Origin: Klebsormidium nitens
Taxonomy: Eukaryota > Plantae > Klebsormidiophyceae
DNA: 64,000 nucleotides
Assembly: GCA_000708835.1 (NCBI GenBank)
Contig: DF237422.1
Span: 1 to 64,000, forward strand
Reading direction: 5' to 3'
A program made the translations under genes and the position numbers. The notes beneath the pieces were generated by a model. The model made no database searches, had not been told where the DNA came from, and saw only the letters and a program-made list of their open reading frames with translations. Below are positions 41,224-58,561 of the stretch, piece after piece (the first letter of the stretch is position 1; each line of letters starts with the position of its first letter).

Positions 41224-44200
41224 TTAGTAGCAGTGCTCACTGTACACCTTGTCTACATTCTGGCCCCACTCGTTGTGGTACTTGTCGAGGAGCTTGTCGG
41301 CAGGGCACATGCCTGCATACGGCAAAGGTGGCCACATAAAGCGATGCTCAGGAGATTGAACTCTCAGGTGGAGCAAAGCAAGCGCAGTAAACAGAAGACT
41401 TTTGAGCTGACGCCGTGCAGCCAGGCGACTATCGGTACAGCGAGCGAAACAAGGGGAACAAAGTCTTCTGTGCAATATTCCGAGGCCGACAACAACTCGG
41501 GCCGCCATTAGGCAGGACAGCAGGACTGCGGTTGTATTGACTCCCATGTTTACGACGCCGTTCGAACTTCAAACTCTGCCGTGACTCCAGAAACATGGGT
41601 TACTTTGAGCAGAAAAAGGGATATGATGCAGGCGACCCGCCGATGACACGTGTACCCAGGCTGTTCGCTTTTGCAGAAGAAGGAGAACGCCGACCAAAGG
41701 AGAAAGCTGTACACGGATGTTCAGAAGTGATAGATACCAACGAAGCGTCACCTTACCTGTGCGCGCAATGTCTTCCAGCATCTCAACGTACTTCTCTTCC
41801 TTCAGACCCCGCCTCTCAAGGCCCTCCTGCGAGGAGCGAGGCTATAGTCAGTTACTTGTGTTGTTAAGACTGTCGTTTTCCAAAACGGCCTTCTGTTACG
41901 GTATACTTCCAAGGAAGTGACGGAAGCTTAAATCTGCACCACTTGACTACCACCGGAAGAACAAGTACAAAAATGAGAAAAACACAGAAAAGACTGGCTT
42001 CACAATAGCAAGCGACTGGTTCCTGCGCAACTGGCTGGGCAATCGCTCCTCGGAACGGCGTCAGACGGCGTCCATTCCGCTGCACTCCAAAACAAGCTGA
42101 AACCTTCGAGACGGAACGAGAAACTGAATTTGCAAGTGACAGAAATGAGACAAGAAATTCGATTTTTTTAAGGCAACCTGCGATATTATGCGCAATCCTT
42201 TTGACCGGTCGTGTCTCGAATCGGCGTTGAATAACGTTCCGATCCGCTGCACTTCAAGTCAAACTGAAGCTCTGAGAATGAAATCGAGAACTGAATGTGC
42301 ATGGGCGGAATGTAAGAAGGGCGGATCGGCTTACTTTAGCGAGCTGCACGACTTGATTTGAAAACCTCAAAACTTAGCCGGGACAAGATTTTGCAAGGAC
42401 GAAACGAGACAAGGGCGGATTCGGCTTACTTTGGCGAAGTGCACGACTTTTTGGGCAACCTTTGGACTGTCCGGTCGTTTCTTCAAGGGGCGTAAAAAAG
42501 TCGTTCCATTCTGCTGCCCTTTAAGACAGACAGAAACCTCCAAGACGAAACCAAACAAATAGAAATCACCAAAGACAAACCCACGACGAGGAGAGACTGT
42601 CTTACTTTGGCGAGCTGCACGACCTTTTGCGCAACGTCTTGAACGGTCGTGCCTCGAAACACCGTCTTCAACCCGGTCCTTGGCACGTTGTTGCGCAGCG
42701 CATCGCGCTCCTCTGCGGTCCAATCCTTGATGAGCTGGAGCGCGGCCTGGAGCGACTTGTCATCATAGAGGAGACCAACCTGGTGCCGCAGAGGAAAAGG
42801 TTTAGGAAGGAGCAACTTAGCAGCTAAGAAAAGGGCGCTCCTCTGCGGTCCACGCTGCAGTAAGCTGGAGCGTGGCCTTGATGGACTTGTCGTCGTAGAG
42901 GAGACCAACCTGGTGCCGAAGAGGAAAGAGTTTCAGGAGGGAACAACTTAGCGGCTGATAAAGCGTTCCTCTCCGGTCCAAGCTGCAATAAGCTGGAGCG
43001 TGGCCTTGATGGACTTGTCGTCGTAGACGCGACCAACCTGATGCCGAAGAGGACAACGTTTCAAGAGGGAGCGACTTAGCGGCTGATAAAGCGTTCCTCT
43101 GCGGTCCAAATTGCGATGAGCTGGAGCGCGGCCTGGAGGCACTTGACTTCGCAGGAGAAACCGACCTGGTGCCAAGAAGGAGAAGGCGTGAATTGATGGC
43201 ATCCATTTTCTGTTTGGCATAAGCAGCTGAGGTGTGATTTTGAACGCCTTTATGCACCCAACAAAAGGGCGCTCCTCTGCGGTTTACGTAGCTATGAGCT
43301 GGAGCGCGGCCTGGAGCGATGCCAAACGTGGCATCGTAGAGGAGATCAAGCTGTTTCGGAAGAAGGAAACATTTGGGATGGTGGCTGTCACATTCACCAG
43401 CTACCAAAAGGGGCAGTCCTTTGCGGTGCAGTCGGGAACAAGCTGTACCGCGGACTGGAGAGACTTGTCGGCATAGGGAATTCCACTCTGATGCCAAAAA
43501 TATAACGGGAGGCTTAAACAACCAGATGCCCGGGAGGAGTGGCAAAGCTTGCGAAGGCCCTGAATTGCTATTGTTTTGCGGTGCGTTCTCCTCATCGAGC
43601 TCGGTAACAGACTAGAGCGACTTGCTGTCGTGAAAATGACCTAGTGCCGAGGAGAAGTCAAGAAATAGTTCGAAGCGCAACATGCCAGATACGACAACAG
43701 TGGCTGACAGGAGAAGAAACTTCAGAACGAATGGCGTTTTCACGTGCCCGCCGACAAAGACAATCAAGTCGAGGGGAGGGGTATTGATCACGACGACAAA
43801 GTCCAAACGTGTGAAGATCAAACACCAGTTTAGAAGACTCTGAAGAAGTCGGCTATGAACAGCAATCGTCATCAACCGACTCCCGATTGTGTTGGGGGAA
43901 GGAACTACTGCACCAAGACGAATGCCTGTAGCCGGAAATGGCGTATCAAGTTTGCAGGACTACGGCTGCAGGCGAATAATCGCTTGGATGAATGAAGGAC
44001 GGAGAAAGCACGGGTCTTTCGATGTGCTCACCCAGAGAGCGGACTGCGCAGTGATGTGCTCGGGCGGGCCGTTGTCCGAGCCCCGCATCTCGACGATGTT
44101 CTTTAGCCGCACCTGCGTTGACAAACAAAAGGGATGAGCCGAATTTTCAAAGCTAGAACGGGGTCAGGAATCTCGCTCATGAAGACGCCATGAAAGTGTC

Positions 44201-47200
44201 TCTTACTTCAAACCCTGATTCTGGCGAACCCAGTTCCTTAGAGCTCCAATCTGTCGCAGCTCACCAGAAACACTTCCCTACGTAAAGATGTACAAAATGG
44301 AAGAGGAGCGGTTCAGGACGCGCCTGTCGTGATCTTAACGATCCTATAAAATCTGCACAGACTGCCAGATGTATTCTAATGACGTGCGTTGCAATATCGT
44401 GTCCTGTCTTTGTCGATTGCCTTCTGATGGATCCATTCGCTCTGACAAAGTACACAAGACAACGATCGTCATCGAAGATGCTATCATCTGAGTGACTAGC
44501 CTCACCTCCGACAGTATGCTGTTGAGCTGGTTCAACCAGTCCGCCATAGTTGGGTACTTTCCAGGGAGGGGCTCGAGCTTGCCAGCCATGAAGTCCTGGA
44601 AACAATGCACCGTGGTTGAGGGTTGGAGGAGAAAGCAAATGGGTACAATATCTGAGCTGCTACCGTCGTTTTGCAATTGACACCGGCTAAAAGTTTTGCA
44701 CTTGACATCGGCTGAACGAACTGTACTTACGACTCCTCCTTCTGTTCCGTTGAGCGGACAGGAGTGTGGATCTTCCACTGTTTACCAAGTAATTGAGATC
44801 GTTAGCAAGGATACTGCGCGTCTCAGCGCAGTGCCATCGAACCCTCGAGCTAGATCCCACAGCCCGCTGCCTGTTGGGTGAGCACCGAATGCAAAAAACC
44901 CTCAAACTCTACGAATGCACAGAACCCTCCATGAAAAGATGCAGCACAAAGCGTCAGTTTCTGAGCCTTGACACATTGAAACTTACCTTGAAATCCAGTC
45001 CCAGGGCCTTGACGTACTCCTTCCCATTCTGGACGTAGTACATGGGCACGTCGAGCGCCCAGTCTACAAATTTCTCAAACCTGTAACGAACAAGGTTGCC
45101 GCATTAGGGCATCAACTTACAAACATGGCCACAATTGTCGTAACGTTGATTGTTATTGCGGAGTTCGTCCGAGCTGATACCGTTTCTTATTCTACCATCG
45201 TAATTCTAAGACAGTCAGTCTGGCCCAATGGCAATTTGGGCGATCGCATGGTGTATGTGGGCAGGGGGCGGTTTCCTTCGTTAGTAAAAAGCGAAGCTAC
45301 ACAGCGTGTCCGCAACTTAGTCCGTCGCGGCGCTCATCTTTTCCAACCAATGCATGGATTCAAGCCAATCAATCGTAGACGGCCTAGCTTTGCGAATCCC
45401 AGGGATAGCCCCCCGTTCGCAATGGAAAAACATGCCGCTATCACCACTGGAAAATTTTCGAATGAAACCGAAGCGAAGTATTGTAAAGGCAAACGTTCTC
45501 AAAACGCACCCAAAGTCGTCGTCGAACACGAACGGCAGCATTCCGGTGCGGTCCGGGTCGGTGTCGGTCCACGTGATGCTGCGGTAGCTCACGAACCCGC
45601 TGGGCTTCCCTTCGTAAAACGGCGAGTTGGCGAAAAGCGCTGTGGCAATCTGGGGGCAGAAAACTCGAGAATTCAAAAACCCCGCTACCCGAACCACGCT
45701 TCTTTGTTTTGGCCGCAAGCCTGGTGGCTCGGAAAAACTACCACCCGCCGCCGCGACAGTCAATCTGCATTCTCCACCTTGCCGACTACGCTGTCAGCGA
45801 GACTTTGATCAACCGCAGCCTCCATCGCTAAGTAGGTCCAACAGGAATGGTGTACCAAGAGAATAACAAGTTACGTTCGCGTTCAAAGAAACTCACCGGT
45901 TGCAGCGCCAGACCGACGCGCATCTTGTTCACCATGTCCTGCTCCGACTCATAATCGAGGTTCACCTGCACAAAAACGACGATAAAATCATTCTGAAGTT
46001 GCGGGATCTCATAGGTGTTTCTATCCGCAACGCAGCCGTTTATCCAGGACCCAGCTGTCTTCTGACGGGTGCCGAGACATTCAGATGCCGCGCACAACAC
46101 ACCACCTTTTTGCTGTCAGACCAAAGTTGACAACGAGCCCTGGTTCGTACCTGGACCGTGCACGTGCGATACATGACGTCATGTCCGTGCTCCCCCTTCT
46201 GTGAGATGAGGTCACTGGCCAGGATGTGCCGCTCCTTGGGAATAGTCGGAGATGACGTCCACTTCGGATCGAAGCCTAGGGTCAAGAAACCTGCGCCGAG
46301 CTCCTTGCAGACTGCCTTAACCTGGAAATGAACCCGGATATGATGTTGATCTGAATGACCCGAGTTGAAACCGAGTTTGAAGACCGAAACTCATTTTGGG
46401 CCAAAGCCAAGGGTCAAAAAACCTGCGGCGAGCTTCTTGCAGACTGCCTTTACCTGGATATGAAGCTGGATATGAAGCCGAATATGACGCCACTTCAGAT
46501 GGGCTGAAAGAAACAGAGTAAAAACATCTCCAGATTGACTTGAGCGGACCCGAATATTTTTAGACTAACCCGAGGTTTCTAGCTAATCCCCTAAGCTCTT
46601 CCACCCGAAAACCTAAACGTTTATCCTGCAACATAATCACGATCACGGTGGAGTAGATAAGCCGGCTTCAACTTCAACTAATACAGGTTTGGTGAGGCAG
46701 GTTGCCCGGCTCTTCACGAATCGCTTCGACCTGAAAAGTTCTGTAATCGAGTACATTGACTCCTAGCCATTGACGCAAGGTTTCGAACCACTGGCGGAGT
46801 GCTCCCCCGCTGTATCACATTCTATACTGTTCTCATGAGCACCCCAGAAGGGCGGCGTCGAACGAGCTGCTGAAATCCCACGTTTGCCGAGGGGGCATCT
46901 GAAAATCAAGCAATGCATATTACACCCACATACTGGAACGCTCCCAACCTGGAACGACACTGCTGACAACACGTCCAGATGGGAGTGTCCGCCTGTCACC
47001 TTCGTTCCAGATTGTTGACTGATCTTCAATGAAAACATTCGACATTCTTTCTGCATCTTGTGGAGCCTGCTGGAAAGTGATCAATGCTCGCGATTGGCCC
47101 CCGAAGCCCTGACAGTCCCGACTTCTCATGCAAACCATACGTGTGCATCTTGCTTACTTCAGCGCACTCCTCTTCGCTTCATACAATTGGGCCGAGCTTG

Positions 47201-49394
47201 CTGAGATCATAAGGACGCGATGTGAGCAGACTCCGTACCCAGTACCTCATTTGAGCACTGTGAAAAAGAGGAACATGATTGGAGTATGAAGAAGAGGTTA
47301 GTTGAACCGACCTGACTGATGTGGTTGTTAACCTCCTCAAGCGTCTCATGCAACGTCTTGAACGGCGCACCACTCAACTCGAGCTGGCCCCCAGGTTCCA
47401 ACGTGATGCTGGCACCGTTCTGGAAATGAAATTCTGTCAGCATATGGTGCAGTTTACAGTCAAAAACCAAATGAGGACAAGGATTCGGATCAAGCTCAAG
47501 ATGAGGAATGAGATCGATTCTCTGCAGCAACGGTCCGTAGTATCTGCATTCTTGATGACAAACTTGTGGCCCGATGAGAAAATAGTACTGTGTTGATGCA
47601 GCTTGTGTGCCAGCAGCTCTTACCGCCAGCATTCCAGCTTGATGCGTGCATGGATTCCAAAGCAATCCTTGGTTGCGACGCTAACATGCTTCAAAAAATA
47701 TCATGTGCCAGAATGTCGACTTTACTAAATGTTGACCAGTACAGTCTTAAGAGGCCTGCCGCTGCCAAAAGTAGCGATTGCTTTCTGCGGCTCGGAGGAT
47801 CAGGGGGTGATATGACAGACTCAACGCAGATTTACAGATCTGTTGAAAACATCTCCAGAATCGTGTCTGGAAAAGTCTGATCTGAAGGACGATTAGAAGA
47901 CGAAATTTCCACGGAGAAAGCTAGGGATTCCGAAAGCCGTTCACATGAACGGTTGCGTCGCCAATTGTGAAAGTATGCTATGCGAAAGAGATCTCTTATG
48001 ATTGAATTTAAGCTTTTTTCCAGGGGAGATTCGAGCGTAAGTGAGTTGAACCAGCTTAGCAGAAGACTCGTTCAATCCTGATTGTAGGCAGTAGAATCTT
48101 CCGATGACATACCCCAACAGAACAATATGCCAATCTTTTCAATCAATCTGAGCAAGCTTACTTAGGTAATTCCTGTCAAATGCATTCCAAGATGTTTTGA
48201 AGGTCACCTGCTTGAGCGCGAGCAGGTTGCCATGTTCAAACGACCGCTCCCACCCAAACTTATCCGCTAGCTTTCCCAGAATGGTGCGGATCTCCTCGTA
48301 GGTCAGACGCTTCTTGTCGCTGACCCGGAAACCAATCTTCTCATGCTCGGTCCCAATCCTGTAGACATTTCAAAACATCCGATAAGTTTGAAAATTCCTG
48401 CTCCTTGACATTAGCTCTGACAGATGCCTCTTGTCACAGCCCGGAAGTTTTCTTCTTCTCATCCTCAGGTTCAGTGGCAAGGTGGACAGACGCAGTGTTA
48501 CAGATGCAAGGCTCTTTCATTCAAATATTGCAATATATCTCCCAATTCAATCTGGCATTGAGCAAAGAGTGCCTCTGCTGTAGGTTTTTTCGCGGAAAGT
48601 GGACCTCCTGGTCGCTTTGACTGAGCCTGTGGTTGACCCGACAGCCCGGTCTACTTATGAAAGCCATAACAACTCTTGTTAAGAGATTCCAATTGTGGCT
48701 CATTGGTTTTGATGAAGAAGCTGAGTTGTAGCCACATAGTTTGTGGTCCATTCTTTGTTGAATACATTGTGACTTAACAGTAGCTTTCATATACCCACCC
48801 ATTTGTAACGACCACCTTAGAAACAACATGGTGAATGGCAAACCCAATGCTTCAGAGCTTATTCTTGGCTGAATGAGCTAGCAAAGTGCAAAGAACACTT
48901 GAGCTAGAACCACATACAAAAGAAAGGCGCTGTGAATCCATTCTCTTATGGACACTAACACACTTACAGAAGTCTTATTCAACCATGGCGGCATGTGATA
49001 CGTCATGCATGCAAAGGAATAGCATCTACAAGCAGATGCAACCTGCATCCTCTACCAGGAATTCTCATGAAACAGGCGCCAATGTGTACATCGGCTTATC
49101 ACACATGCAAAAAAGTAAGTTCCCAGAGCATGAGAGCAAAATCCTAGTTGCACTTCACATACCACCACATTGCATCACAACATCAAAGATAGGACTGGAT
49201 CAACAATTGAAATTCTGATGAATTACCAAGGTGGTCTCTATATCCTCTCACACAGCCGGATTGAAGCATCAGACTCACCGCCACTGGTCCCTTGGAGTGC
49301 ACGCCTTTTTGAAGAAGTCAACAAGATCTTGCTTCGTCAACCTGGCTTCCTCTCCATTTTCCCCCTTGGAGCCGCTCGCTTTCTGATCAGCCAT
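41224..49394 (-). CDS. Divergent plant-type glutamate-cysteine ligase paralog (GCS2 family), 450 aa, no transit peptide
   Basis: 12 exons: 49394-49279, 48358-48208, 47419-47312, 46321-46151, 45965-45897, 45649-45510, 45080-44987, 44595-44506, 44112-44032, 42779-42606, 41826-41757, 41312-41224; 1353 nt, GT-AG, no internal stop. Motifs [62 protein letters not shown]. Confidence 0.93.
42780..43500 (-). repeat. About 5-6 serial decaying copies of the acceptor plus 5' end of exon 42779-42606
   Basis: agctggagcg.ggcc...gacttgtc.tc.tag...gaccaacctg.tgccg recurs at roughly 125-nt spacing upstream of the real exon. Confidence 0.9.
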
Positions 49395-50455
49395 CTTTCT
49401 TGACAAGTCGAATGATACCTTTTGTCCCTACCTGTCCGACTGACCTTCCCCCTGAAATTCCCAGCTTCGCGAAGATCACGCTGCTCTGTTCCTCCAAACA
49501 AGAACGTCTGTGTGGGAAAAATGGCAGTGGCAATTGTTGCCTTCCTTTTCGAAGCTGGGAGGGATTCTCTCTGCTGCGTCCATAGGGGATCACTACCGTT
49601 CGATAGCACGCCATGCACGCCAAGAAGGCCACGTTTGGCGCCAGCGCTGTTCTGCTGCACCGCCATGTTCCAACTTCCACCACTTGTCGCTTCCACTGCA
49701 ATTGGCGCAATTGCGGGGCATAAGCTATGCCCTGGAAAGTCAAAAGTTTGGCTCCTCTAGTTACAAGCCTGCTGAAGTTACTACGGTAGTACTACCGTGG
49801 TATGTACCAGCCGACCAGGTACCGGTATTCATTGTGCAGAGTCGGACCTTTCAATCATTGAGCTCTTCAGGCCACTGTAATTGCGTCAGAATGACGACAA
49901 CGTTGAACGCAGAATTCGCTCTGTCTTATCTTCAAGTTCTGTTCTTAACCGCAACTTCTCCCGCAGCCAAGTTTCTGGCGCTTCTGAGATTTGTAGAGTA
50001 GGTATCGAAGGTAGTACTAGAAGGGAGGTCCTTTAAACTTTTAATATCCGCTGTAACCATGTAGCGGGTTAGGTCTTACCTACGTTAGCAATCCAATCCA
50101 AATCGGGTTACGAAAACAACATGGAATGATCCTGAATCTTAACACAGCATTTCTAGCGCTATCATCATGTACGGTTCCTCCGTATTTTGGTGTTCAAAGC
50201 GCTTTCCTGGTCCTGCTGGACTGCAGCAGCGCTGCCCCGTCACTCATCCCTGGCGAGTCCGCGCAATCTGGATTGGCTCTTTTGCGCTGCTCTGAACATT
50301 TTGTGGCGGCTTCAAGTTGGTCCTGTTGACAATCTCTGAGCGAAGTGCAACCTGCCACATTCATCGCTTCCATGCAGATCTTCATGCAGCTCGTCTTGCG
50401 CACGGAGGGCGTCGTTGGCCAGACTTAGGGGTAAGGACGGATCGGCATTTGCTCG
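49395..50455. promoter_or_regulatory. Putative bidirectional promoter/5'UTR interval between the two GCL genes
   Basis: 1061 nt between divergent start codons at 49394 (-) and 50456 (+). No specific cis-elements identified. Confidence 0.5.
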
Positions 50456-53400
50456 ATGGCGGACGGGGCGACCATGAGGGCAGCCTGCGGGCACGCTCTT
50501 CCTCACCACGCGCCTCTTGGTCAGCGGCAGGGATCCAGGCAGGAAGCATCCGTTTCTTCTAGGCTTGTGAATGTGGGCCCAGGACGAGTCCACAGGCATG
50601 CTTCAAATGCACGCGCCGGCCCACAGATCTTGCCTCGGATACGACAAAATTGTCTTGCTTCTGCACCGGTTGGTTGTAGAAAGAAAAGCTTAGAGCATGC
50701 AGTTCACGGGAGGCATCGGCTAGAGGGATCGGTATCGAGGTTGAGCGGAGGGTCTGACTTGAAGTCAGAATCGACGATGCACAGAAGAGGGAAAGGGACG
50801 ATTGTTGCCGCAGGACCGCCGACTGAGGAGGTTGTCACGGATACGAAGATGCTGACAAAGGCTGACCTTGTTGAGTACATGAAGAAAGGATGCAAACCGA
50901 AGGAGAATTGGCGGTAAGAACCGCTGCAGTTTATTGTCAGATTCAATCCACAAGATTGACAAGATTGATAGATTGTTATCCTGGTCTTAAGGACCGACTT
51001 GAATCTATCTCAAATGTGGCTTCAGCTTTTCGATGGTGGTACATCTGTTCGCTAACCCTAATCTGCCATTCTGTGCTTATGTTTTGAAGATGCATCAACG
51101 GTGCATGTCATGGCGATTTCTGGATATGTGATTGGTCCGAGATTCAAAAGGCCGCCAGCCTTTCGGCATTGGTGGATGAGGCCCAAACATCAACACTATT
51201 GGCCTCTTTGAGAATTTTCTAAGCATGACACTACGGTTTGTATTCTTGCCTGGCTTGTTGGAAGCACATTCTGATGTCCTGGGCGGAGCTAAGAGAGCAA
51301 AGGGCTGCAGATTGCTCACGATCAACAGCGTCCAAGCGCTGTCACCTTCCCGCTTCGAACTTGACATCTGATACGATCCACCTTCAAGTTCCAGCAATTT
51401 GTGTGACAACTTGATTACCACAAGCTGAAAAGCTGGCCTCTGAGTTTTATCTCTGCTTGTTTTGAAAGAAAGTCTGTTGAAAGAAAGAGAGGATGGATTC
51501 TCTACAGCACAGATTCGAATCAAGCTGACGGTTTCCGTTTCTTTTTGTAACCTGCATGAAACAATTGCATATTTAGTTGATGTTTTCTGAGTCCGTTTAT
51601 AACCTGCACAAAATGCTTGAACTTTTTACTCTTATCCCTCCCTGCATTTCAGAGCAGATGTGTAACACAGAGGTCATGAAAAGTAAGGTCAGAAAACTCA
51701 CTCTAATCATATCAAGTTAAGATTTGTCAGGGTCTGACTGTACAGCACCTGCTCTGCAGCATAGGGACTGAACACGAAAAGTTTGGGTTCAAGTTTGAGG
51801 ACAAGCGGCGGCTAAACTACGAGGAGATCCATCAGCTGCTTGAGGCGCTGGCTGACCGGTTTGGATGGGAGCGGGTGTTTGAGAACAACAAGTTGATTGC
51901 ACTTAAGCAGGTAAAACAAGAAGCAGTCCCCTTCCATATGATCTGGAATTTGCAGTTCATGGATGAAAGCAATCGTGCTTTCTGAGGGCGTTCGGCGATT
52001 GGTTTTACACTACTCATCATTGGCTTTTCGGAAAGTGGTATAAGGTACATAATGATGCTAATGAAGACAATTGTTGCTTGTCCATCCATACAAACGCTGC
52101 GAGCTGATGCATATTCAAATATACTGTAGTGACAATCAAAGACTTTGGAGTTAGCAGCTGACAGATGTGATCAAGTGGACGAGCCTTTTCCCCCCGAGGA
52201 ATACTAGCAAGTGCTTTGAACCTTGAGACACGCTTCATGCTCAAGCAGGGGTGCTAGGCTCGAGCTAGATGACCTGCCTCCTTCACTACTTCCTTTATTA
52301 CAAGTAGCTGATTAGTAATTTGCTTCGTCCTGCAGAGCGGCCAAAGCATCACGCTAGAGCCAGGGGGTCAGTTTGAGCTGAGCGGGGCCCCCTTGAGCAC
52401 TCTGCACCAGACATGTGGAGAGGTCAACAGCCACCTGTATCAAGTGAGGCTGCTGAGCAGCCTTTGTTGCCACTGTCCCTCATTTGACATTGCCATCTGG
52501 TGGGAGAAATCCTGCTATCTGCAGTTGCCACCTATGATTAAACCACCACCCCGGGTATAACTCGGGGCAAACCGGCTGGCATTCGCTCCAGCGGCCACCG
52601 AAATTCAAATTTCGGCCCGAAGGCGCCCGCTTCCAGCTTGTGCATTTTTGACCTTATACATCAAAGAAACTAAAGCATTACTTCACCGTTTTAGGCGGTC
52701 TTGCTTTCTAGAGCTCTATCTTAGTGGTATCAGCAAGGCCAGGTCGAAACCGCCGCTTAATTCGTGAAGGAACGGCCTGTTTTAATGTAGGCAAGGGTAC
52801 CTTCTTTATGTGTGCGTCCAGTGTGCGCCCGTCGCGAATTCAAGTTGCGAACTTGATTATGAGCATTCCTGGTTACCAGGAGTATTTATACCTTGGGTGG
52901 TGGTTTAATCGTGGAGGATTGGTCAAGGGGGTTTGTGAACTGAAATACCTGTCGTTGTGTCCAAGGGCTAGGAGATGCTGAGTCTCCTTATGGAAAGGAC
53001 GATATAAAAGTTTGCAGTCATTCGAGACAGGATCAGGAACTCCCTAGGTCTGACAGAAAGGCTGCCAGAACAGCAGATTCGCAATAGTGAAGGCTGTGTT
53101 CAAGAGTCCACTTCAGAACGACTTCCTGTGTTCAGCATGGTCTGGTATTTGGATGCCGGCAACCCCTCACTGATAAAAATAAGGAAAAGAAGGCAGAGGA
53201 CATTCACCTCACTGATTGGTACCTGACCATAGAAGCTGAGAACAAGCACGTATGCAATGAAATGCTCTGTAACGAGCAACAAAGGAGTGCGCCCTATCAT
53301 AGATCAGGTCCACAAGAGACTGGTGCCACGTAGTGTGCCACCGTAGTGTGCGACAATGACAGTACTTTCAAATAGTGAGTTTGCAGTGCCGCTGTGACAG

Positions 53401-56400
53401 GCTCTTTCAGTTTACATATTTGCTTTGATTGCCCTTTCAGGTGAAGACAGTCTGTGAGGAGATGGGTGCCGGCTTTCTGGGGCTCGGTTTCGACCCCAAG
53501 TGGAGCATCGAGGACATTCCGATCATGCCAAAGGGCCGCTACAAGCTGATGAAGGAATACATGCCGCGCGTGGGGTCTCACGGGCGCGACATGATGTTCC
53601 GCACATGCACCGTGCAAGTCAACCTGGACTTTGACACCGAGCGCGACATGATCAACAAGATGCGGGTCGGGCTGGCTTTGCAACCGGTGAGTTTGGGGGT
53701 TGGCTCGCAGGGGTGAGATGACGTGTCAGAGGGGAATTCATAATATCATCGAAAGGATGGTACTGTTGACACCGAGCTCGACATTGTGTAAGAGATGCGG
53801 GTCGAGCTGGGTCTCCAACCGTTCGGATCTAACTCGCTCAGTTGATGAATGGCCTGCTTTTAAACGGACATGACATGTCATCAAGGGATATCATGATCAT
53901 ATTGTGCCGGCAAACACACGGAACATCCGGACGGCTGGAGCTGCATCTGGTGTCTTCCAGAGGTCGATCTAAACGTAGAAAAGGCAGTAGTTTACGATAG
54001 TCAGAAGCCATCTTCCAGAGCTCCCATTGTGCCAACCGCTCGCGCTTTGCTGACCCGTCTAGTTCCACCAGCAGCCCCGTGCTGACTCCCTATCTCGATC
54101 ATGTTTGGCAGAAGCTTACAAAGGCTCAAGTTTCTCGCTTGATCATTGAATTCTTTTGCTTGTGACATGATGGACTTCTCACACTCTCTTCTGCACACCG
54201 CTCGCTCTTCGCTAACCAACTCCGATCTACACCCCTTCAGATCGCGACGGCTCTGTTCGCCAACTCCCCATTCACTGAGGGCAAGCCCAACGGCTACCTG
54301 AGCTTCCGAAGTCAAATCTGGAAAGACGTGGATCCCCACCGGACGGGCATGCTGCCGTTTGTCTTTGACGATGATTTTGGGTGAGCCGTTTTGCTGGACG
54401 CTCGGCCATGGTCGACCCAGATGCGACATGCAACTGACTAGTTAGAGTAGCTTTGAATGGAATGGAGAGAGAGGACTTGTCTTTCGTGCTTCAGCAGCTA
54501 TTACCAGATTTACAGTAGCCGCTGTCACGGAATGCTGTCAGTTGCAATGATCATCTGGAGGGGTGGGGGGGAGTCGAGACCTGAAACAGTTGCTTCTCGT
54601 CACGGTTTCAAAGCCTATGTTTCGGAGGCAGACCGCAGATATAATCCAAGAACCAGAGATCGGGATTTGGACGCTTGTGTTTGGACTATCCACAGACCGA
54701 CTCTGAGCTCTGGCCTCGAATATCGAAGCTCTTTGGGCCTAGCACTCGTTTGATCAGAAAGCCTTAACCCCGCTCTCGAACCCTGACCTCTAACCTTGAA
54801 TTAGAAGCCTGGCATTCACAATCTGGATTGCGACCGTCCTCTTCAGACTTGTCCGGAAGATTGAATCTCGGAGCGAATGTTGCAGGTTCGAAAAGTACGT
54901 AGACTACGCTCTAAATGTGGCAATGTACTTCGTGTACCGGAAGAAGGGGTACGTGGACGCTCTTGGGCTGGACTTCAAGGTATTGACCGCAGCCTCGTTG
55001 ATTTTGCCGCGTTAATCTGTTTTCCGTAAATGTCGCTTTTACTTCCATCAGCATATTTGCAAATATGGTTTTGTATGTTGAGTGCGAGTACTTTGGCTTG
55101 CTTTCTCATGACCGATTGCCGTCTGTCTACTTTTACGGTTTGCCTCCTTCCGGCCGATTCTCTTTGGTCCATCATTTTTCTTTGGTTTGCCTTTCTCCTT
55201 AAGCGACCAGTTTGAAAGGAGGACACTCATGGCGAGCACGACTTTCGAATTTTGGGCTTTTGATCCCTCATTTTCAATCTGGCTCGCCAGAACGATGCCT
55301 ACAGACACCTGGCATACCTTATCGGTGACATTACGTCCCAACATGCAGCTTTTGATCGCTTGACTTCCCATTCCGGTGGTGCATCCACCGAGATCGTATC
55401 GATCAATCATCACTGGCACAAACGTAGCCGGGATGATTTAAGATTCAAACCTACTGTCAAACCTACTGTAAACCACACCCGCTCCCAGTGTCATCTGCTA
55501 ACCTGTTTCGCTCTGCCACGTGGCTAGGATTTCATGGCGGGCAAATTGTCGGCCCTGCCCGGAGAGTATCCGACAATCAACGATTGGGAAAACCACCTAA
55601 CCACCATCTTCCCCGAGGTAAGCAAAGCGCGGCCAACTTCCTCACATCCCCGTACTCCTAGGACGGTTGTGAACTCCCATCTTCTCCATCGTCAAATCAG
55701 CACCATTGTTTGCCCTACTGCTCTAGTGGACCATTGAGTGGATGTGTATTTGTACGGTGCAAGCTATACGAAGGAGCCTTTGATCACAATCCAGCCTTGC
55801 AGGCCGCCACGACAGAGACCTTAATTTCAGCTGTCAAGAAACTCACCTCATATTCGACCTGTGTCGGACCTGTGATGTTTCGAGGAACATTTTTGCTGTG
55901 AATCTCATCTTCCTTTTGATTGGCTTTGAACAGTTCTTTGCGGCCTTATTTAAGGGCCAGACACGTGGCACTGAAAAACGATATTAGTTCATCCCTTCTG
56001 ACGTGATTCTCAATTGTCAAGGCTCGGCGCTATCGACAGCCGTGGTTTGCGTTTAGCCAGGGATGACACGTATCGCTATCGGAGGCAAATGTGGACATCA
56101 CTTGAGAGTCGCCAAACTGGTCCACACACAACCAATCAATCCCCTCACTTCAACCATTGCTGCCAAGAGATATTTCAAAAGCGACGTATTTGACGCAGCA
56201 AGTGCCTCGGATTGAATGTCTCCCGAGACGAACCCCTTTGTGACCACGCCATCTAGAATCCGCCCAAGTCCGAGATGAGAAAACTTTCTCGAACCATTGG
56301 CAACATTTACATCGCACATACTCATGAGCACCCAAACGCTCGCAAAAACGTACCTCCAAGCCCATTCCACGCACAGTAGGCCGCCTCTTACCCGCCCCAC

Positions 56401-58561
56401 TCTCGCCGCAGGTACGCCTGAAGAAATATATCGAGATGCGCGGCGCGGATGCGGGCCCGTGGAAGTCGTTGTGCGCGCTGCCCGCGTTGTGGGTATGTCC
56501 CCGCAAACCCTAAACCCCGGACCGCTCTGCTCACGCACCGTCTTTTTCCTCGTCCGAATGCTGCAGGTGCGACTGAAACGGTACATTGAAATGCGGGGGG
56601 CGGATAATGGGTGTGTAGACCTGATTCTGGGGCAGTCGGCCATGTGGGTGAGTCGAGAAGGAGGCGGTTAGAAGGGCCTCCGTACCGCTGTCACTCCCAT
56701 CTTCCGAGTCGGTTTTAGAAAGGCCTGCATCATGTTTCATGGAAGCAGACTTTCCTTACATCATCGGTGTGTGAGAGCTGGATGTTACGAGGATTTATAC
56801 ATCGGGTCTGGAACTCTCGAGCTGTTGCTAGAGGGCTCAACTTGAAACACACCACCTTGTGGGGCAAGGATAACGCTCAACCGAGTGCATTCCACATCTG
56901 GTTTCTCAGATTTGTGCTGCAAAGAAGGTTGCTGAAGGGAATCCGCTGTTTCATAATCTGTCGGGCCAGTCGTTTCGCCCAATATTGTTTCCATCCTTTT
57001 ATTACAAGAAGTCCTCCTTAAATCGTGTCATGAAGGCCTTTCTGCTTGATAAGCTCCCCCCTTTCCTTTCCCGCACCCCTCTGTATTGGAAGAAAGTCTC
57101 GGGCTCCTTCTGGAAACAGGGGTGTCCCAATCACGGTCACCCAGTCCTTGCTGCAAGCGACTACCAAAGTGATTCCCCTGACTCTCAGTCGCCCAAAAGG
57201 CGGTGGATCGGAGGACGCCATCTACTGTAGCCCCTCCCGATTGCTTTGCCCCACTCTCTGCGCAGAACACGTCACCTTAGCATACTCTAGAGCGGCAACC
57301 ATGATAATTGCCGTCCCGACCACATTGGAATGTTCAGCTGGAACGCAACCGTTGCCTAGTGATGAACCGTTTAATGAAAGGTGTAGAGTAGATTTTCAAT
57401 CCGCACTGCCTCTGTCCCATCGCAGCTGGGGCGGTCGGACCTTTGTTTTGACAAGGAGTCGCTCTCAAGGGTGCCTGGACCCGAACCCCGACTGTTTGAA
57501 CCCTCTATTCAAAACCGTAGTCGTCCACAAGCAGGATCAACCTCAGTGTACCAAAATCCTTTTCTCCTTTCCCCCGTCACAGGTCGGGCTTTTGTACGAC
57601 GAGGAGTCGCTACAAGGCTGCCTGGACCTGATCTCCGACTGGACGACTGGCGAGATGCAAATGCTGCGCGACAAGGTCCCGGTCACCGGCCTGCGCACGC
57701 CCTTCCGCGACGGCATGGTCCGCCACGTGGCACAGGATGTTCTCAAGCTTGCGAGGGTGAGCGTTCGAGGACCCTCCTTTTGCATACCGTACAGAACATG
57801 ACATCGTAACAGCACAGAGGGGGGATCATCAAGTGCATGTACACGCAACTCTTTTTGACAGCACGGCCACTGTCCTGAAGCTCGCGCGGGTGAGCTCCCA
57901 AAAAACGCGTTTTGATTCGGAGCGGCTTGAAAGCTGCAAGCTTCGAGAGGTGCACTTCCTGAGTACCGTGCATTATTGCGCGCCCTCTGGAGAAGTCAGT
58001 TTGCTCAAAGTCCTTTCCAAGTCGCATTGGTTAGCGTACAAAGACTTCCAATCTGAAAAGCCTGTTACTGCCCAGCGTACGCATTTGTGTGGTTTATGCT
58101 AAATGGCTTAGTGCTTTGATTCGTTCCCGTTGTCTGGGTTTGCCATTTGTGCATTGTTGGAACAGGACTTGGAGGTCACGCTTATAGGAGCATTTACGTG
58201 CATACTAGAACCGTTGCTGACAGTCTGTTTGCTTGCTTTCCACAGGAGGGCCTGGAGCGACGCGGCTTCAACGAGGCTGAGTTCCTGAAGGGTCTGGAGG
58301 ACATCGCACGAAAAGGTGAGGCATTTGCGCGGGACAAGTTCGAAGTAGGAACAGATATGCAGACTCCGACGGCGCTGAAATATCAACGGACACGTACTCA
58401 GACAAGTGGGTTCTAATAGTAAAAGGTGTGCATATCTCACGCCCTCTGAACAAGTGCCTTCTTCTTCTGCAGGAGTGACGTCCGCTGATGTCCTGCTTGA
58501 CAAATATCACAACGAGTGGGACGAGGACGTAGACCGAGTCTACGACGAGTTTCTCTACTGA
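50456..58561 (+). CDS. GSH1: Glutamate-cysteine ligase (gamma-glutamylcysteine synthetase), plant GSH1 type, with ~115-aa transit-peptide-like extension; 566 aa using exon 8a
   Basis: Exons 50456-50913, 51760-51910, 52336-52443, 53441-53686, 54241-54380, 54886-54979, 55528-55617, 56412-56492 (8a), 57583-57756, 58246-58315, 58473-58561. Motifs [88 protein letters not shown]. Confidence 0.96.
56567..56647 (+). CDS. Second copy of GSH1 exon 8 (8b), candidate mutually exclusive exon: [27 protein letters not shown]
   Basis: ctgcag| 81 nt |gtgagt; same length and phase as exon 8a, no stop, catalytic EMRGAD intact, 8 synonymous versus 1 nonsynonymous difference over the first 13 codons. Confidence 0.8.

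What the first reader, a model, noticed from the sequence alone, without database searches (positions are those of the whole stretch)
56412..56647. Candidate mutually exclusive exons that toggle the redox switch of GSH1
Exon 8a (56412-56492, [27 protein letters not shown]) and exon 8b (56567-56647, [27 protein letters not shown]) are both 81 nt, phase 0, with strong AG/GT sites. Over the 13 catalytic-half codons there are 8 synonymous changes, 1 conservative K->R and 4 identical codons, a purifying-selection pattern unlike the frameshifted echoes elsewhere. The second half replaces exactly the regulatory Cys (C406 equivalent) and the Trp/basic interface pair, and adds a Cys five residues earlier. 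The 74-nt spacer is far shorter than any other intron modelled here (minimum 157 nt), and branch-point-like motifs (ctaaac 56510, ctcac 56530) lie under 50 nt from the 8a donor, the classic steric basis for mutual exclusion. This would let one gene make redox-regulated and redox-independent GCL by splicing, which I do not know to be described.
Basis: partly seen in the sequence, partly recalled or inferred. Interest (0 to 1): 0.92.

Follow-up and report, generated by a model that had tools for sequence, protein, structure and literature searches.

The report
Alternative exons swap GSH1's redox switch
A green alga's gene for the first enzyme of glutathione synthesis has two alternative 81-base exons, only one of which goes into each mRNA; one encodes the cysteine and contact residues of the enzyme's known redox switch and the other lacks them, so splicing chooses between a switchable and a switch-less enzyme.

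Summary
Exons 8a (56412-56492) and 8b (56567-56647) of a plastid-type glutamate-cysteine ligase gene (GSH1) are both 81 nt and phase 0, with a 74-nt spacer between them.

- **Splicing.** RNA contigs from 8 runs in 6 studies show exactly four GT..AG joints: 7->8a, 7->8b, 8a->9 and 8b->9. None shows 8a->8b or 7->9. Sixteen RNA runs hold half of the sampled words of the 236-nt stretch, as expected if both exons but not the spacer are present.
- **Usage.** Both forms are major, and their depths sum to the depth of the flanking exons. The balance ranges from 8a-only contigs (X11) to 8b-only contigs (X15, X16).
- **Age and constraint.** The first 13 codons differ by 8 synonymous changes and one K->R. 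Synonymous sites are saturated. 8b is therefore old and constrained, unlike the young intronic exon echoes nearby.
- **Protein consequence.** 8a carries the equivalents of Arabidopsis W402, R403 and C406, the regulatory disulfide partner and two dimer-interface residues. 8b has V, D and L there.
- **Source.** The window matches Klebsormidium nitens. Its public protein model uses 8b only.

The biochemical consequence, the way exclusion is enforced and conservation in relatives remain untested. No paper describing this was found. Other unchecked first-stage notes flag similar exon pairs in two other genes of this genome.

The parts
50456..58561 (+). GSH1 gene, a plant-type glutamate-cysteine ligase. 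It has 11 coding exons per mRNA and encodes 566 aa in either isoform, with an N-terminal presequence of about 110 aa.
   Evidence: Gene model and translation. N-terminal exon found by tblastn. The public protein P0277 scores 683.5 bits on TIGR01436 (cut-off 463) and matches PF04107.
52414..52416 (+). Cys codon in a constitutive exon, equivalent to Arabidopsis C186. It is one partner of the regulatory disulfide and is present in both isoforms.
   Evidence: Alignment to PDB GCL chains and ungapped alignment to the Arabidopsis-type enzyme P0236.
55528..55617 (+). Exon 7, the constitutive upstream exon. Its donor joins either 8a or 8b.
   Evidence: Joints 55617->56412 and 55617->56567.
56412..56492 (+). 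Exon 8a, the canonical streptophyte form. It encodes W, K and C at Arabidopsis positions 402, 403 and 406; the Cys codon is at 56472-56474.
   Evidence: Joints. Land-plant and other streptophyte-alga GCLs all carry this type.
56493..56566 (+). 74-nt spacer between 8a and 8b. It is never seen removed as an intron. The only well-placed branch-point-like motif (ctcac, A at 56533) lies 40 nt from the 8a donor.
   Evidence: Sequence. No 56492->56567 joint. RNA runs hold the words of both exons but not those of the spacer (share 0.50), while DNA runs hold all of them (share 1.00).
56567..56647 (+). Exon 8b, the alternative form. It has V, D and L at positions 402, 403 and 406, and a new Cys at position 401 (codon 56612-56614). 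This is the form used in the public K. nitens protein model.
   Evidence: Joints. P0277 is 100% identical to the 8b isoform over 412 aa.
57583..57756 (+). Exon 9, the constitutive downstream exon. Its acceptor receives either 8a or 8b.
   Evidence: Joints 56492->57583 and 56647->57583.
41224..49430 (-). Head-to-head GCL paralog. It has the same exon plan and a single exon 8 (44112-44032, [27 protein letters not shown]). It has no presequence and lacks both switch cysteines.
   Evidence: tblastn. Model and 64% identity to GSH1. N-terminus.

Best explanation
**What it is.** GSH1 of this alga, most likely Klebsormidium nitens, contains an old tandem duplication of one 81-nt exon. The two copies are spliced in a mutually exclusive way, so every mRNA carries 8a or 8b.

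**What the exon encodes.** Its first half encodes a catalytic-core strand (the invariant E..R.D motif) and is kept nearly identical in both copies. Its second half encodes a loop and the start of a helix, which in plant GCL carries C406, W402 and R403. C406 forms the activating disulfide with C186. W402 and R403 lie in the homodimer zipper.

**The two proteins.**
- 8a keeps W, K and C at these positions, giving the canonical thiol-switchable, dimer-capable enzyme.
- 8b has V, D and L. It cannot form the C186-C406 disulfide and probably cannot dimerise.

Splicing therefore sets the share of the plastid GCL pool that responds to the thiol redox state. That share differs strongly between data sets.

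**Shown here:** the exon pair, the four junctions, comparable abundance, the residue replacements, purifying selection and old age.

**Inferred:** the loss of redox control and of dimerisation in the 8b enzyme, that it is active, that the switch in usage is regulated, and that the 74-nt spacer is too short to be spliced out.
For: **Junctions and depths.**
- Four GT..AG joints are seen, with no 8a->8b or 7->9 joint.
- Depths for 8a/8b are 185/162 (X1), 120/247 (X2), 197/151 (X9), 179/135 (X10) and 41/34 (X12).
- In the four deeper runs these sums approximate the flanking-exon depth, for example 347 against 344 in X1; in X12 they fall short (75 against 92-148).
- Single long contigs carry only 8a (X11, 2733 nt) or only 8b (X15 1327 nt, X16 2283 nt).

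**Wider survey.** Sixteen RNA runs from six studies hold exactly half of the sampled words, consistent with both exons without the spacer. Four DNA runs hold all of them.

**Selection and age.**
- codons 1-13 show 4 identical codons, 8 synonymous changes and 1 K->R.
- 0 of 200,000 neutral simulations reproduce that pattern.
- 3 of 13 conserved-residue codons are identical, against 0.45 expected at saturation and 0.39 between GSH1 and its paralog.

**Residue mapping.** map the residues.

**Literature.** PMC6463388 and PMC9426629 establish that C186-C406 is the regulatory disulfide, that the S186 mutant is DTT-insensitive, that R403E abolishes dimers, and that related proteobacterial GCLs are neither dimeric nor redox-regulated.

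**Natural precedents for 8b.**
- natural Cys-less GCLs carry ...G.VDMMVAQSALW, resembling 8b.
- C186 and C406 occur together (209 of 274) or are both absent (50 of 274).

**Fold.**: the 8b isoform models at pLDDT 93, with pLDDT 92-98 in the exon. The model superposes on PDB 2GWC at TM 0.95 and rmsd 0.7 A.
Against: - The RNA evidence is from assembled contigs, which drop rare variants. Low levels of double inclusion or skipping cannot be excluded, and 'only 8a' or 'only 8b' means 'the other form is several-fold lower', not zero.
- Sample conditions are coded, so regulation as opposed to batch or strain effects is not shown.
- In Arabidopsis, losing C186 or C406 is recalled (Hicks et al. 2007, not read here) to lower activity about 20-fold, so 8b could be a weak enzyme.
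- 8b adds a Cys at position 401 and keeps C186, so a different disulfide is possible.
- No relative's sequence could be examined, so conservation of 8b is unknown.
- No significant competing RNA structure was found, and the minimal intron length in this species is not known to me.
Confidence: 0.75

Rival explanations
1. 8b is a decaying pseudo-exon. On this view it is one more of the small tandem 'echoes' of exon pieces that litter this gene, and is included only as splicing noise.
For: The gene and its paralog hold several 128-162-nt tandem echoes of exon ends inside introns. The Closterium GCL locus has a degenerate exon-8 echo containing a stop codon.
Against: - 8b makes up 33-100% of transcripts in seven of the eight runs laid.
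- Its catalytic half shows only synonymous change plus K->R.
- It is far older than the echoes: 56% against 80-86% nucleotide identity.
- It is in frame with good splice sites.
- The echoes in the laid stretch are not spliced in.
Confidence: 0.03
2. 8b makes a constitutively low-activity ('locked reduced') enzyme. Switching to 8b would then be a way to turn GCL activity down, not to free it from redox control.
For: In plant GCL the disulfide activates the enzyme, and its reduction lowers activity considerably (PMC9426629). Cys-to-Ser mutants of the pair are DTT-insensitive (PMC6463388). They are recalled (Hicks et al. 2007, not read here) to be about 20-fold less active.
Against: - 8b does not merely lose the Cys. 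It replaces the whole helix start with a sequence pattern found in natural Cys-less GCLs and in the paralog (G.VD...[GA]QSA.W). Those enzymes presumably work without a disulfide.
- Related proteobacterial GCLs are active without redox control.
- 8b is the sole form in some data sets (X15, X16). That would be odd for a crippled version of an enzyme of this importance, although the paralog might compensate.
Confidence: 0.15
3. 8b re-tunes the switch rather than removing it. Its new Cys at position 401 would pair with the retained C186, giving a disulfide with a different midpoint potential or geometry.
For: 8b keeps C186 as an otherwise orphan Cys, which is rare: 5 of 274 GCLs have C186 without C406. 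It also gains a Cys five residues before the lost one. In the model this Cys sits in the loop just before the helix that normally carries C406.
Against: - No coordinates could be measured here.
- Only one other GCL in the sample has a Cys at that position (P0323), and it lacks C186, so there is no co-variation in support.
- C186 lies in a constitutive exon and cannot be removed for one isoform alone, so its retention needs no functional explanation.
Confidence: 0.1
4. The two forms come from two alleles, strains or gene copies rather than from alternative splicing of one pre-mRNA.
For: Some runs show only one form (X11, X15, X16).
Against: - DNA contigs hold the whole 8a-spacer-8b stretch (share 1.00).
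- Unspliced RNA contigs run from intron 7 into 8a, and from 8b into the downstream intron, but not the converse (table 8). This fits a tandem layout.
- All laid contigs are identical to the window, with no other letters.
- Runs of one study differ: X11 has only 8a, X12 has 41/34.
- The paralog's exon 8 is only 58-62% identical in nucleotides, so it cannot be mis-laid at 95% likeness.
Confidence: 0.02

Closest known systems
Mutually exclusive exon pairs that arose by tandem exon duplication (for example alpha-tropomyosin exons 2/3, where a branch point too close to the upstream donor prevents joining; pyruvate kinase M exons 9/10; insect 14-3-3 and Dscam clusters)
   Same: The exons are adjacent, of equal length, in the same phase and homologous. 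Each is joined to the same flanking exons and never to the other. The spacer is very short, with the only well-placed branch-point-like motif 40 nt from the upstream donor. As in pyruvate kinase M, the swapped segment changes the regulatory behaviour of a metabolic enzyme while the catalytic core is kept.
   Different: It occurs in a streptophyte alga, a lineage where mutually exclusive exons are, to my knowledge, rare. Co-inclusion or double skipping would stay in frame, so nonsense-mediated decay cannot be what enforces exclusion. No docking/selector RNA pairing was detected. The steric mechanism has not been tested.
Plant glutamate-cysteine ligase thiol switch (Arabidopsis C186-C406 disulfide with monomer-dimer transition; PDB 2GWC/2GWD, 6GMO)
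   Same: Isoform 8a has C186, C406, W402 and a basic residue at 403, together with most of the zipper residues. The fold is the same.
   Different: Isoform 8b lacks C406, W402 and the basic residue. The second, rosid-type disulfide (C349-C364) is absent from both isoforms, which have Ala at both positions. In land plants the switch is fixed in the protein, whereas here it is optional at the RNA level.
Cys-less plant-type GCLs of proteobacteria and some green algae, reported as non-dimerising and not redox-regulated
   Same: The second half of 8b follows the same residue pattern as one such class (for example L005 ...GADAGRVDMMVAQSALW) and as the neighbouring paralog.
   Different: Those proteins also lack C186, whereas the 8b isoform keeps it. 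In those organisms the state is fixed in the gene, not chosen by splicing.

Membership tests
Mutually exclusive exon cluster | Adjacent exons of the same length and phase that are homologous to each other | tested here: met
   Both exons are 81 nt and phase 0, 155 nt apart start to start. Twelve of the first 13 residues are identical.
Mutually exclusive exon cluster | Each exon is spliced to the same upstream and downstream constitutive exons | tested here: met
   Four GT..AG joints are seen across 8 runs from 6 studies: all four in five runs, one pair (7->8a, 8a->9 or 7->8b, 8b->9) in each of the other three.
Mutually exclusive exon cluster | Exactly one exon per transcript: no co-inclusion and no double skipping | tested here: met
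   No 56492->56567 or 55617->57583 joint is present in any contig. In the four deeper runs the depths of 8a and 8b sum to about the flanking-exon depth. The limit is that contigs drop rare variants, so rare exceptions cannot be excluded.
Mutually exclusive exon cluster | An identified enforcing mechanism (steric hindrance, competing RNA pairing, U2/U12 incompatibility or frame-dependent decay) | tested here: inconclusive
   - Frame-dependent decay is excluded, because 81 nt keeps the frame.
- All splice sites are GT-AG of the common type.
- No structure is more stable than shuffled controls (z = +2.1).
- One borderline pairing exists (8 of 200 shuffles as good).
- The 74-nt spacer fits steric hindrance, but this is untested.
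Plant-type glutamate-cysteine ligase (TIGR01436 / PF04107) | Profile match above the curated cut-off, and the fold of the solved plant enzyme | tested here: met
   TIGR01436 scores 683.5 bits against a cut-off of 463.15. PF04107 scores 273 bits. The model matches 2GWC at TM 0.95 and rmsd 0.7 A.
Plant-type glutamate-cysteine ligase (TIGR01436 / PF04107) | Catalyses ATP-dependent ligation of glutamate and cysteine | not testable with these tools
   This needs an enzyme assay of both isoforms.
Thiol-switch GCL (regulatory C186-C406 disulfide) | Both cysteines of the regulatory pair are present | tested here: met
   Met for isoform 8a. Not met for isoform 8b, which has Leu at position 406.
Thiol-switch GCL (regulatory C186-C406 disulfide) | Dimer-zipper residues W402 and R403 are present | tested here: met
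   Isoform 8a has W and K. Isoform 8b has V and D, so the feature is not met for 8b. The residue list comes from PMC6463388.
Thiol-switch GCL (regulatory C186-C406 disulfide) | Activity rises on oxidation and falls with DTT; dimer-monomer transition | not testable with these tools
   This needs recombinant protein, activity assays with and without DTT, and size-exclusion chromatography.

The most novel reading that the evidence does not exclude
The alga uses regulated, strictly mutually exclusive splicing to decide, condition by condition, whether its plastid GCL is a thiol-activated dimer or a switch-less monomer. This would be a post-transcriptional control of glutathione synthesis unknown in any organism.

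The exon pair would be older than the duplication that produced the neighbouring presequence-less (possibly cytosolic), Cys-less paralog, which would descend from the 8b form.

It would be one of several such exon pairs in this genome, all generated by a genome-wide process of 130-160-nt tandem duplication.
Probability: 0.35. Interest if true: 0.88.

Novelty: new variant of a known kind. Interest (0 to 1): 0.78.

Why it matters
Redox activation of GCL through the C186-C406 disulfide is the textbook post-translational control of glutathione synthesis in plants. It is regarded as a fixed property of the protein. Here a close algal relative of land plants makes that switch optional by splicing, and both forms are abundant.

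- **A natural experiment.** The same gene and the same catalytic core occur with and without the switch and the dimer contact. This bears on the open question of what dimerisation and redox control are for in vivo (PMC6463388 leaves it open).
- **A correction to the public record.** The only database protein for this gene is the Cys-less isoform, so comparative studies would wrongly score this alga as lacking the switch.
- **Alternative splicing in the plant lineage.** Confirmed, protein-changing mutually exclusive exons are, to my knowledge, few in this lineage. This gene also shows young tandem exon echoes beside the functional pair.

Tried and rejected
**Pseudo-exon.** This was my starting guess, at 65%. 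Junction depths and the codon pattern rejected it.

**Recent gene conversion from the paralog.** Rejected.
- Nucleotide identity is 47/81 for 8b-paralog, 50/81 for 8a-paralog and 45/81 for 8a-8b.
- Amino-acid identities are 16, 15 and 15 of 27.
- 8b and the paralog share only N399 and the QSA motif.

**A relic 8a-like exon in the paralog.** A weak tblastn hit at 43569-43519 proved to be chance.

**Docking/selector RNA structures.** No fold is better than shuffled controls. The inverted repeats are short. One pairing, between the 8a acceptor tract (56376-56411) and the 8b donor region (56641-56673), scores -31.7 kcal/mol against -24.0 +/- 3.9 for shuffles. That is borderline, and its expected effect (hiding both sites) does not fit the data.

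**Conservation in relatives.** This could not be settled.
- The closest protein representatives were land plants with genes of 90-140 kb and no DNA available.
- Bacterial contigs were found, and an unrelated alga with a single canonical exon 8.
- A metagenome scan returned GCL genes with no intron at the exon-8 borders, presumably bacterial.
- A region-restricted search of 5.8 billion proteins found an 8b-like segment only in the K. nitens protein itself. That collection also lacks the alga's own 8a isoform, so the blank says nothing.

**Technical failures.**
- An alignment of separate exon translations to a backbone protein was scrambled by the aligner. A cleaner four-exon version did retrieve the K. 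nitens protein.
- The first attempt at the metagenome scan failed because the query was too short.
Full report
**The observation.** Both follow a cag acceptor and precede a gt donor (gtatgt for 8a, gtgagt for 8b). They lie in phase 0 and are separated by 74 nt. Over the first 13 codons there are 4 identical codons, 8 synonymous differences and one K->R. Over the last 14 codons, 11 residues differ. If 11 substitutions are placed at random in the first 39 nt, none of 200,000 trials leaves one or fewer amino-acid changes, and 31% create a stop.

**The gene.** I rebuilt the gene. It has eleven coding exons per mRNA, from an ATG at 50456 to a stop ending at 58561, and encodes 566 residues with either exon 8.
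- The N-terminal presequence is about 110 residues, rich in Arg, Ser and Ala.
- It ends in the [10 protein letters not shown] motif that aligns with the land-plant VAASPPTE motif.
- All other introns are 157-997 nt.
- The product is a plant-type glutamate-cysteine ligase: TIGR01436 scores 683.5 bits against a cut-off of 463, and PF04107 also matches.
- It is about 70% identical to every land-plant GCL sampled and 55-64% identical to two Closterium species' GCL.

**The organism.** A database protein named glutamate-cysteine ligase of Klebsormidium nitens (P0277, 459 aa) is 100% identical to the 8b isoform over 412 residues, and 97.1% identical to the 8a isoform.
- The window is therefore almost certainly from K. 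nitens.
- 'Organism B' in the run tables gives contigs identical to the window. This fits the strain's former name, K. flaccidum, which I state from my own knowledge.
- The public model uses exon 8b only and starts at an internal Met.

**Transcript evidence.** Assembled RNA contigs of eight runs from six studies were laid on 55400-57800.
- Only four joints appear, all GT..AG: 55617->56412, 55617->56567, 56492->57583 and 56647->57583.
- No contig joins 8a to 8b or exon 7 to exon 9.
- Word depths for 8a/8b are shown below.

| Run | 8a depth | 8b depth |
|---|---|---|
| X1 | 185 | 162 |
| X2 | 120 | 247 |
| X9 | 197 | 151 |
| X10 | 179 | 135 |
| X12 | 41 | 34 |

- In each of the four deeper runs the two depths add up to roughly the depth of the flanking exons. 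In X1 the sum is 347, against 344 for exon 9. In X12 the sum (75) falls short of its flanks (92-148). In the deeper runs this leaves little room for co-inclusion or double skipping.
- Both co-inclusion and double skipping would stay in frame. Their absence therefore cannot be due to nonsense-mediated decay.
- In X11 a single 2733-nt contig runs 7-8a-9. In X15 and X16 single contigs of 1327 and 2283 nt run 7-8b-9.
- X11 and X12 belong to the same study.
- A word search with the 236-nt stretch 8a-spacer-8b found four DNA runs holding all sampled words. It found sixteen RNA runs from six studies holding exactly half, as expected if both exons but not the spacer are in the RNA.
- Limits: contigs lose rare variants, 'only' means several-fold dominance, and sample conditions are hidden.

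**Age and selection.**
- 8a and 8b share 45 of 81 nucleotides.
- Among the 13 codons for identical residues (Met and Trp excluded), only 3 are identical. That compares with 0.45 expected at saturation from the codon usage, and 0.39 observed between GSH1 and its paralog.
- The duplication is therefore old, and both copies have kept the catalytic half intact.
- The other tandem echoes in this gene are different. They lie at 53766-53821, 57441-57494, 57871-57895 and 54027-54055, with spacings of 133-162 nt. They are 79-86% identical to their sources and out of frame or partial. The one that lies in the stretch laid (57441-57494) is not spliced in.

**What the swap changes.**
- Exon-by-exon alignment to solved plant GCLs and an ungapped alignment to the Arabidopsis-type enzyme place the constitutive Cys of exon 3 at C186 and the 8a Cys at C406.
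- The rosid-specific pair C349/C364 is Ala/Ala in both isoforms.
- Published work (PMC6463388; PMC9426629) shows the following:
  - C186-C406 is the regulatory disulfide, and its reduction inactivates the enzyme.
  - The S186 mutant is DTT-insensitive.
  - W394/R395 of the Brassica enzyme (Arabidopsis W402/R403) belong to the eleven-residue dimer zipper.
  - R403E alone abolishes dimers.
  - Related proteobacterial GCLs neither dimerise nor respond to redox.
- 8a has W, K and C at positions 402, 403 and 406. 8b has V, D and L, plus a Cys at 401.
- Most other zipper residues lie in constitutive exons and are conserved.
- An AlphaFold model of the 8b isoform (mean pLDDT 93; pLDDT 92-98 across exon 8) puts the first half of the exon in two strands holding family-invariant residues, and the second half in a loop plus the first turns of a helix. 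The model superposes on PDB 2GWC at TM 0.95 and rmsd 0.7 A.

**Is the 8b segment a plausible working variant?**
- In 274 plant-type GCLs gathered here, 209 have both C186 and C406, 50 have neither and 15 have only one. The pair therefore behaves as a unit.
- GCL genes on metagenome contigs, uninterrupted at the exon-8 borders and so presumably bacterial, include a class reading ...GADAGRVDMMVAQSALW or ...AEMMIAQSAFW. This class has no Cys at either position.
- The second half of 8b ([13 protein letters not shown]) and the paralog's exon 8 ([13 protein letters not shown]) follow the same pattern.
- This argues that 8b encodes a coherent alternative helix start rather than a damaged canonical one. 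It does not prove activity.

**The paralog.** A second GCL gene lies head to head with GSH1 (41224-49430, minus strand).
- It has the same exon plan, with one extra intron and a single exon 8.
- It has no presequence, and has Leu and Thr at positions 186 and 406.
- It is 64% identical to GSH1 and about 57% identical to land-plant GCLs, so it arose in this lineage.
- Whether its exon 8 descends from an 8b-like exon cannot be resolved from 27 codons. No relic of a second exon 8 was found in it.

**How exclusion may work.**
- The 74-nt spacer is less than half the length of the next shortest intron in either gene.
- The only branch-point-like motif in the usual window lies 40 nt from the 8a donor (ctcac, A at 56533). 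The other (ctaaac) lies about 20 nt away.
- This fits steric hindrance of the tropomyosin type, but I could not test it. I do not know the minimal intron length of this species.
- No competing RNA structure stood out.

**Novelty.** Full-text searches returned no paper on this:
- mutually exclusive exons together with glutamate-cysteine ligase;
- alternative splicing together with GSH1;
- Klebsormidium together with mutually exclusive splicing.

A fourth search, Klebsormidium with GCL terms, listed only papers without the word Klebsormidium. The kind of mechanism is well known in animals. What is new is its use to make a well-studied thiol switch of a key metabolic enzyme optional, in a close algal relative of land plants.

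**Verdict.** The splicing claim is established at the level that contigs allow. The protein-level consequence follows directly from sequence and published mutants. The activity of the 8b enzyme, the regulation of the choice, the exclusion mechanism and conservation in relatives are open.

Noticed in passing
window 41224-49430 (minus strand): A GCL paralog lies head to head with GSH1, and their first coding exons are about 1 kb apart (49430 against 50456). It has no presequence and lacks both switch cysteines (L at 186, T at 406). It is 64% identical to GSH1.
   Followed up: partly
window 42705-43185: A tandem array with a 128-nt period (3.7 copies, 82% matches) repeats the start of the paralog's exon 9 and the intron before it. 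The extra copies carry stop codons.
   Followed up: partly
window 53766-53821, 54027-54055, 57441-57494, 57871-57895: Young tandem echoes of exon ends or intron pieces lie 133-162 nt from their sources and are 79-86% identical to them. Small tandem duplications of roughly nucleosome size seem frequent in this locus, and are the likely raw material of exon pairs such as 8a/8b.
   Followed up: partly
L001:18485-26184 (Closterium sp. NIES-65 GCL locus): The GCL gene of a distant streptophyte alga shows the same habit. Several exons have degenerate tandem copies in the adjacent introns, including an exon-8 copy with a stop codon at L001:24302-24427. The public protein model (1523 aa) fuses GCL to an upstream MRS2-like gene.
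   Followed up: no
P0277 (public K. nitens GCL protein) against window 50456-58561: The public gene model starts at an internal Met (window 50774), so it lacks about 107 residues of presequence. It also contains only exon 8b. Database users therefore see a Cys406-less enzyme without a transit peptide.
   Followed up: yes
window 56376-56411 and 56641-56673: The pyrimidine tract and acceptor of 8a can pair with the donor region of 8b at -31.7 kcal/mol, against -24.0 +/- 3.9 for shuffles (8 of 200 as good). The meaning is unclear, because such a stem would hide both sites at once.
   Followed up: partly
L005-L016 (metagenome contigs): A class of GCL genes, uninterrupted at the exon-8 borders and so presumably bacterial, reads ...MM[IVL]AQSA[LF]W in place of the Cys-bearing ...C[AG]LPA[LF]W and also lacks C186. 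Across 274 GCLs the two cysteines are nearly always both present or both absent.
   Followed up: partly
same genome, other windows (first-stage notes s1-270335, s1-285433): First-stage readers flagged similar tandem, possibly mutually exclusive exon pairs in proline dehydrogenase and in a MUT9-like kinase of this genome. If real, this kind of splicing may be recurrent in this alga.
   Followed up: no
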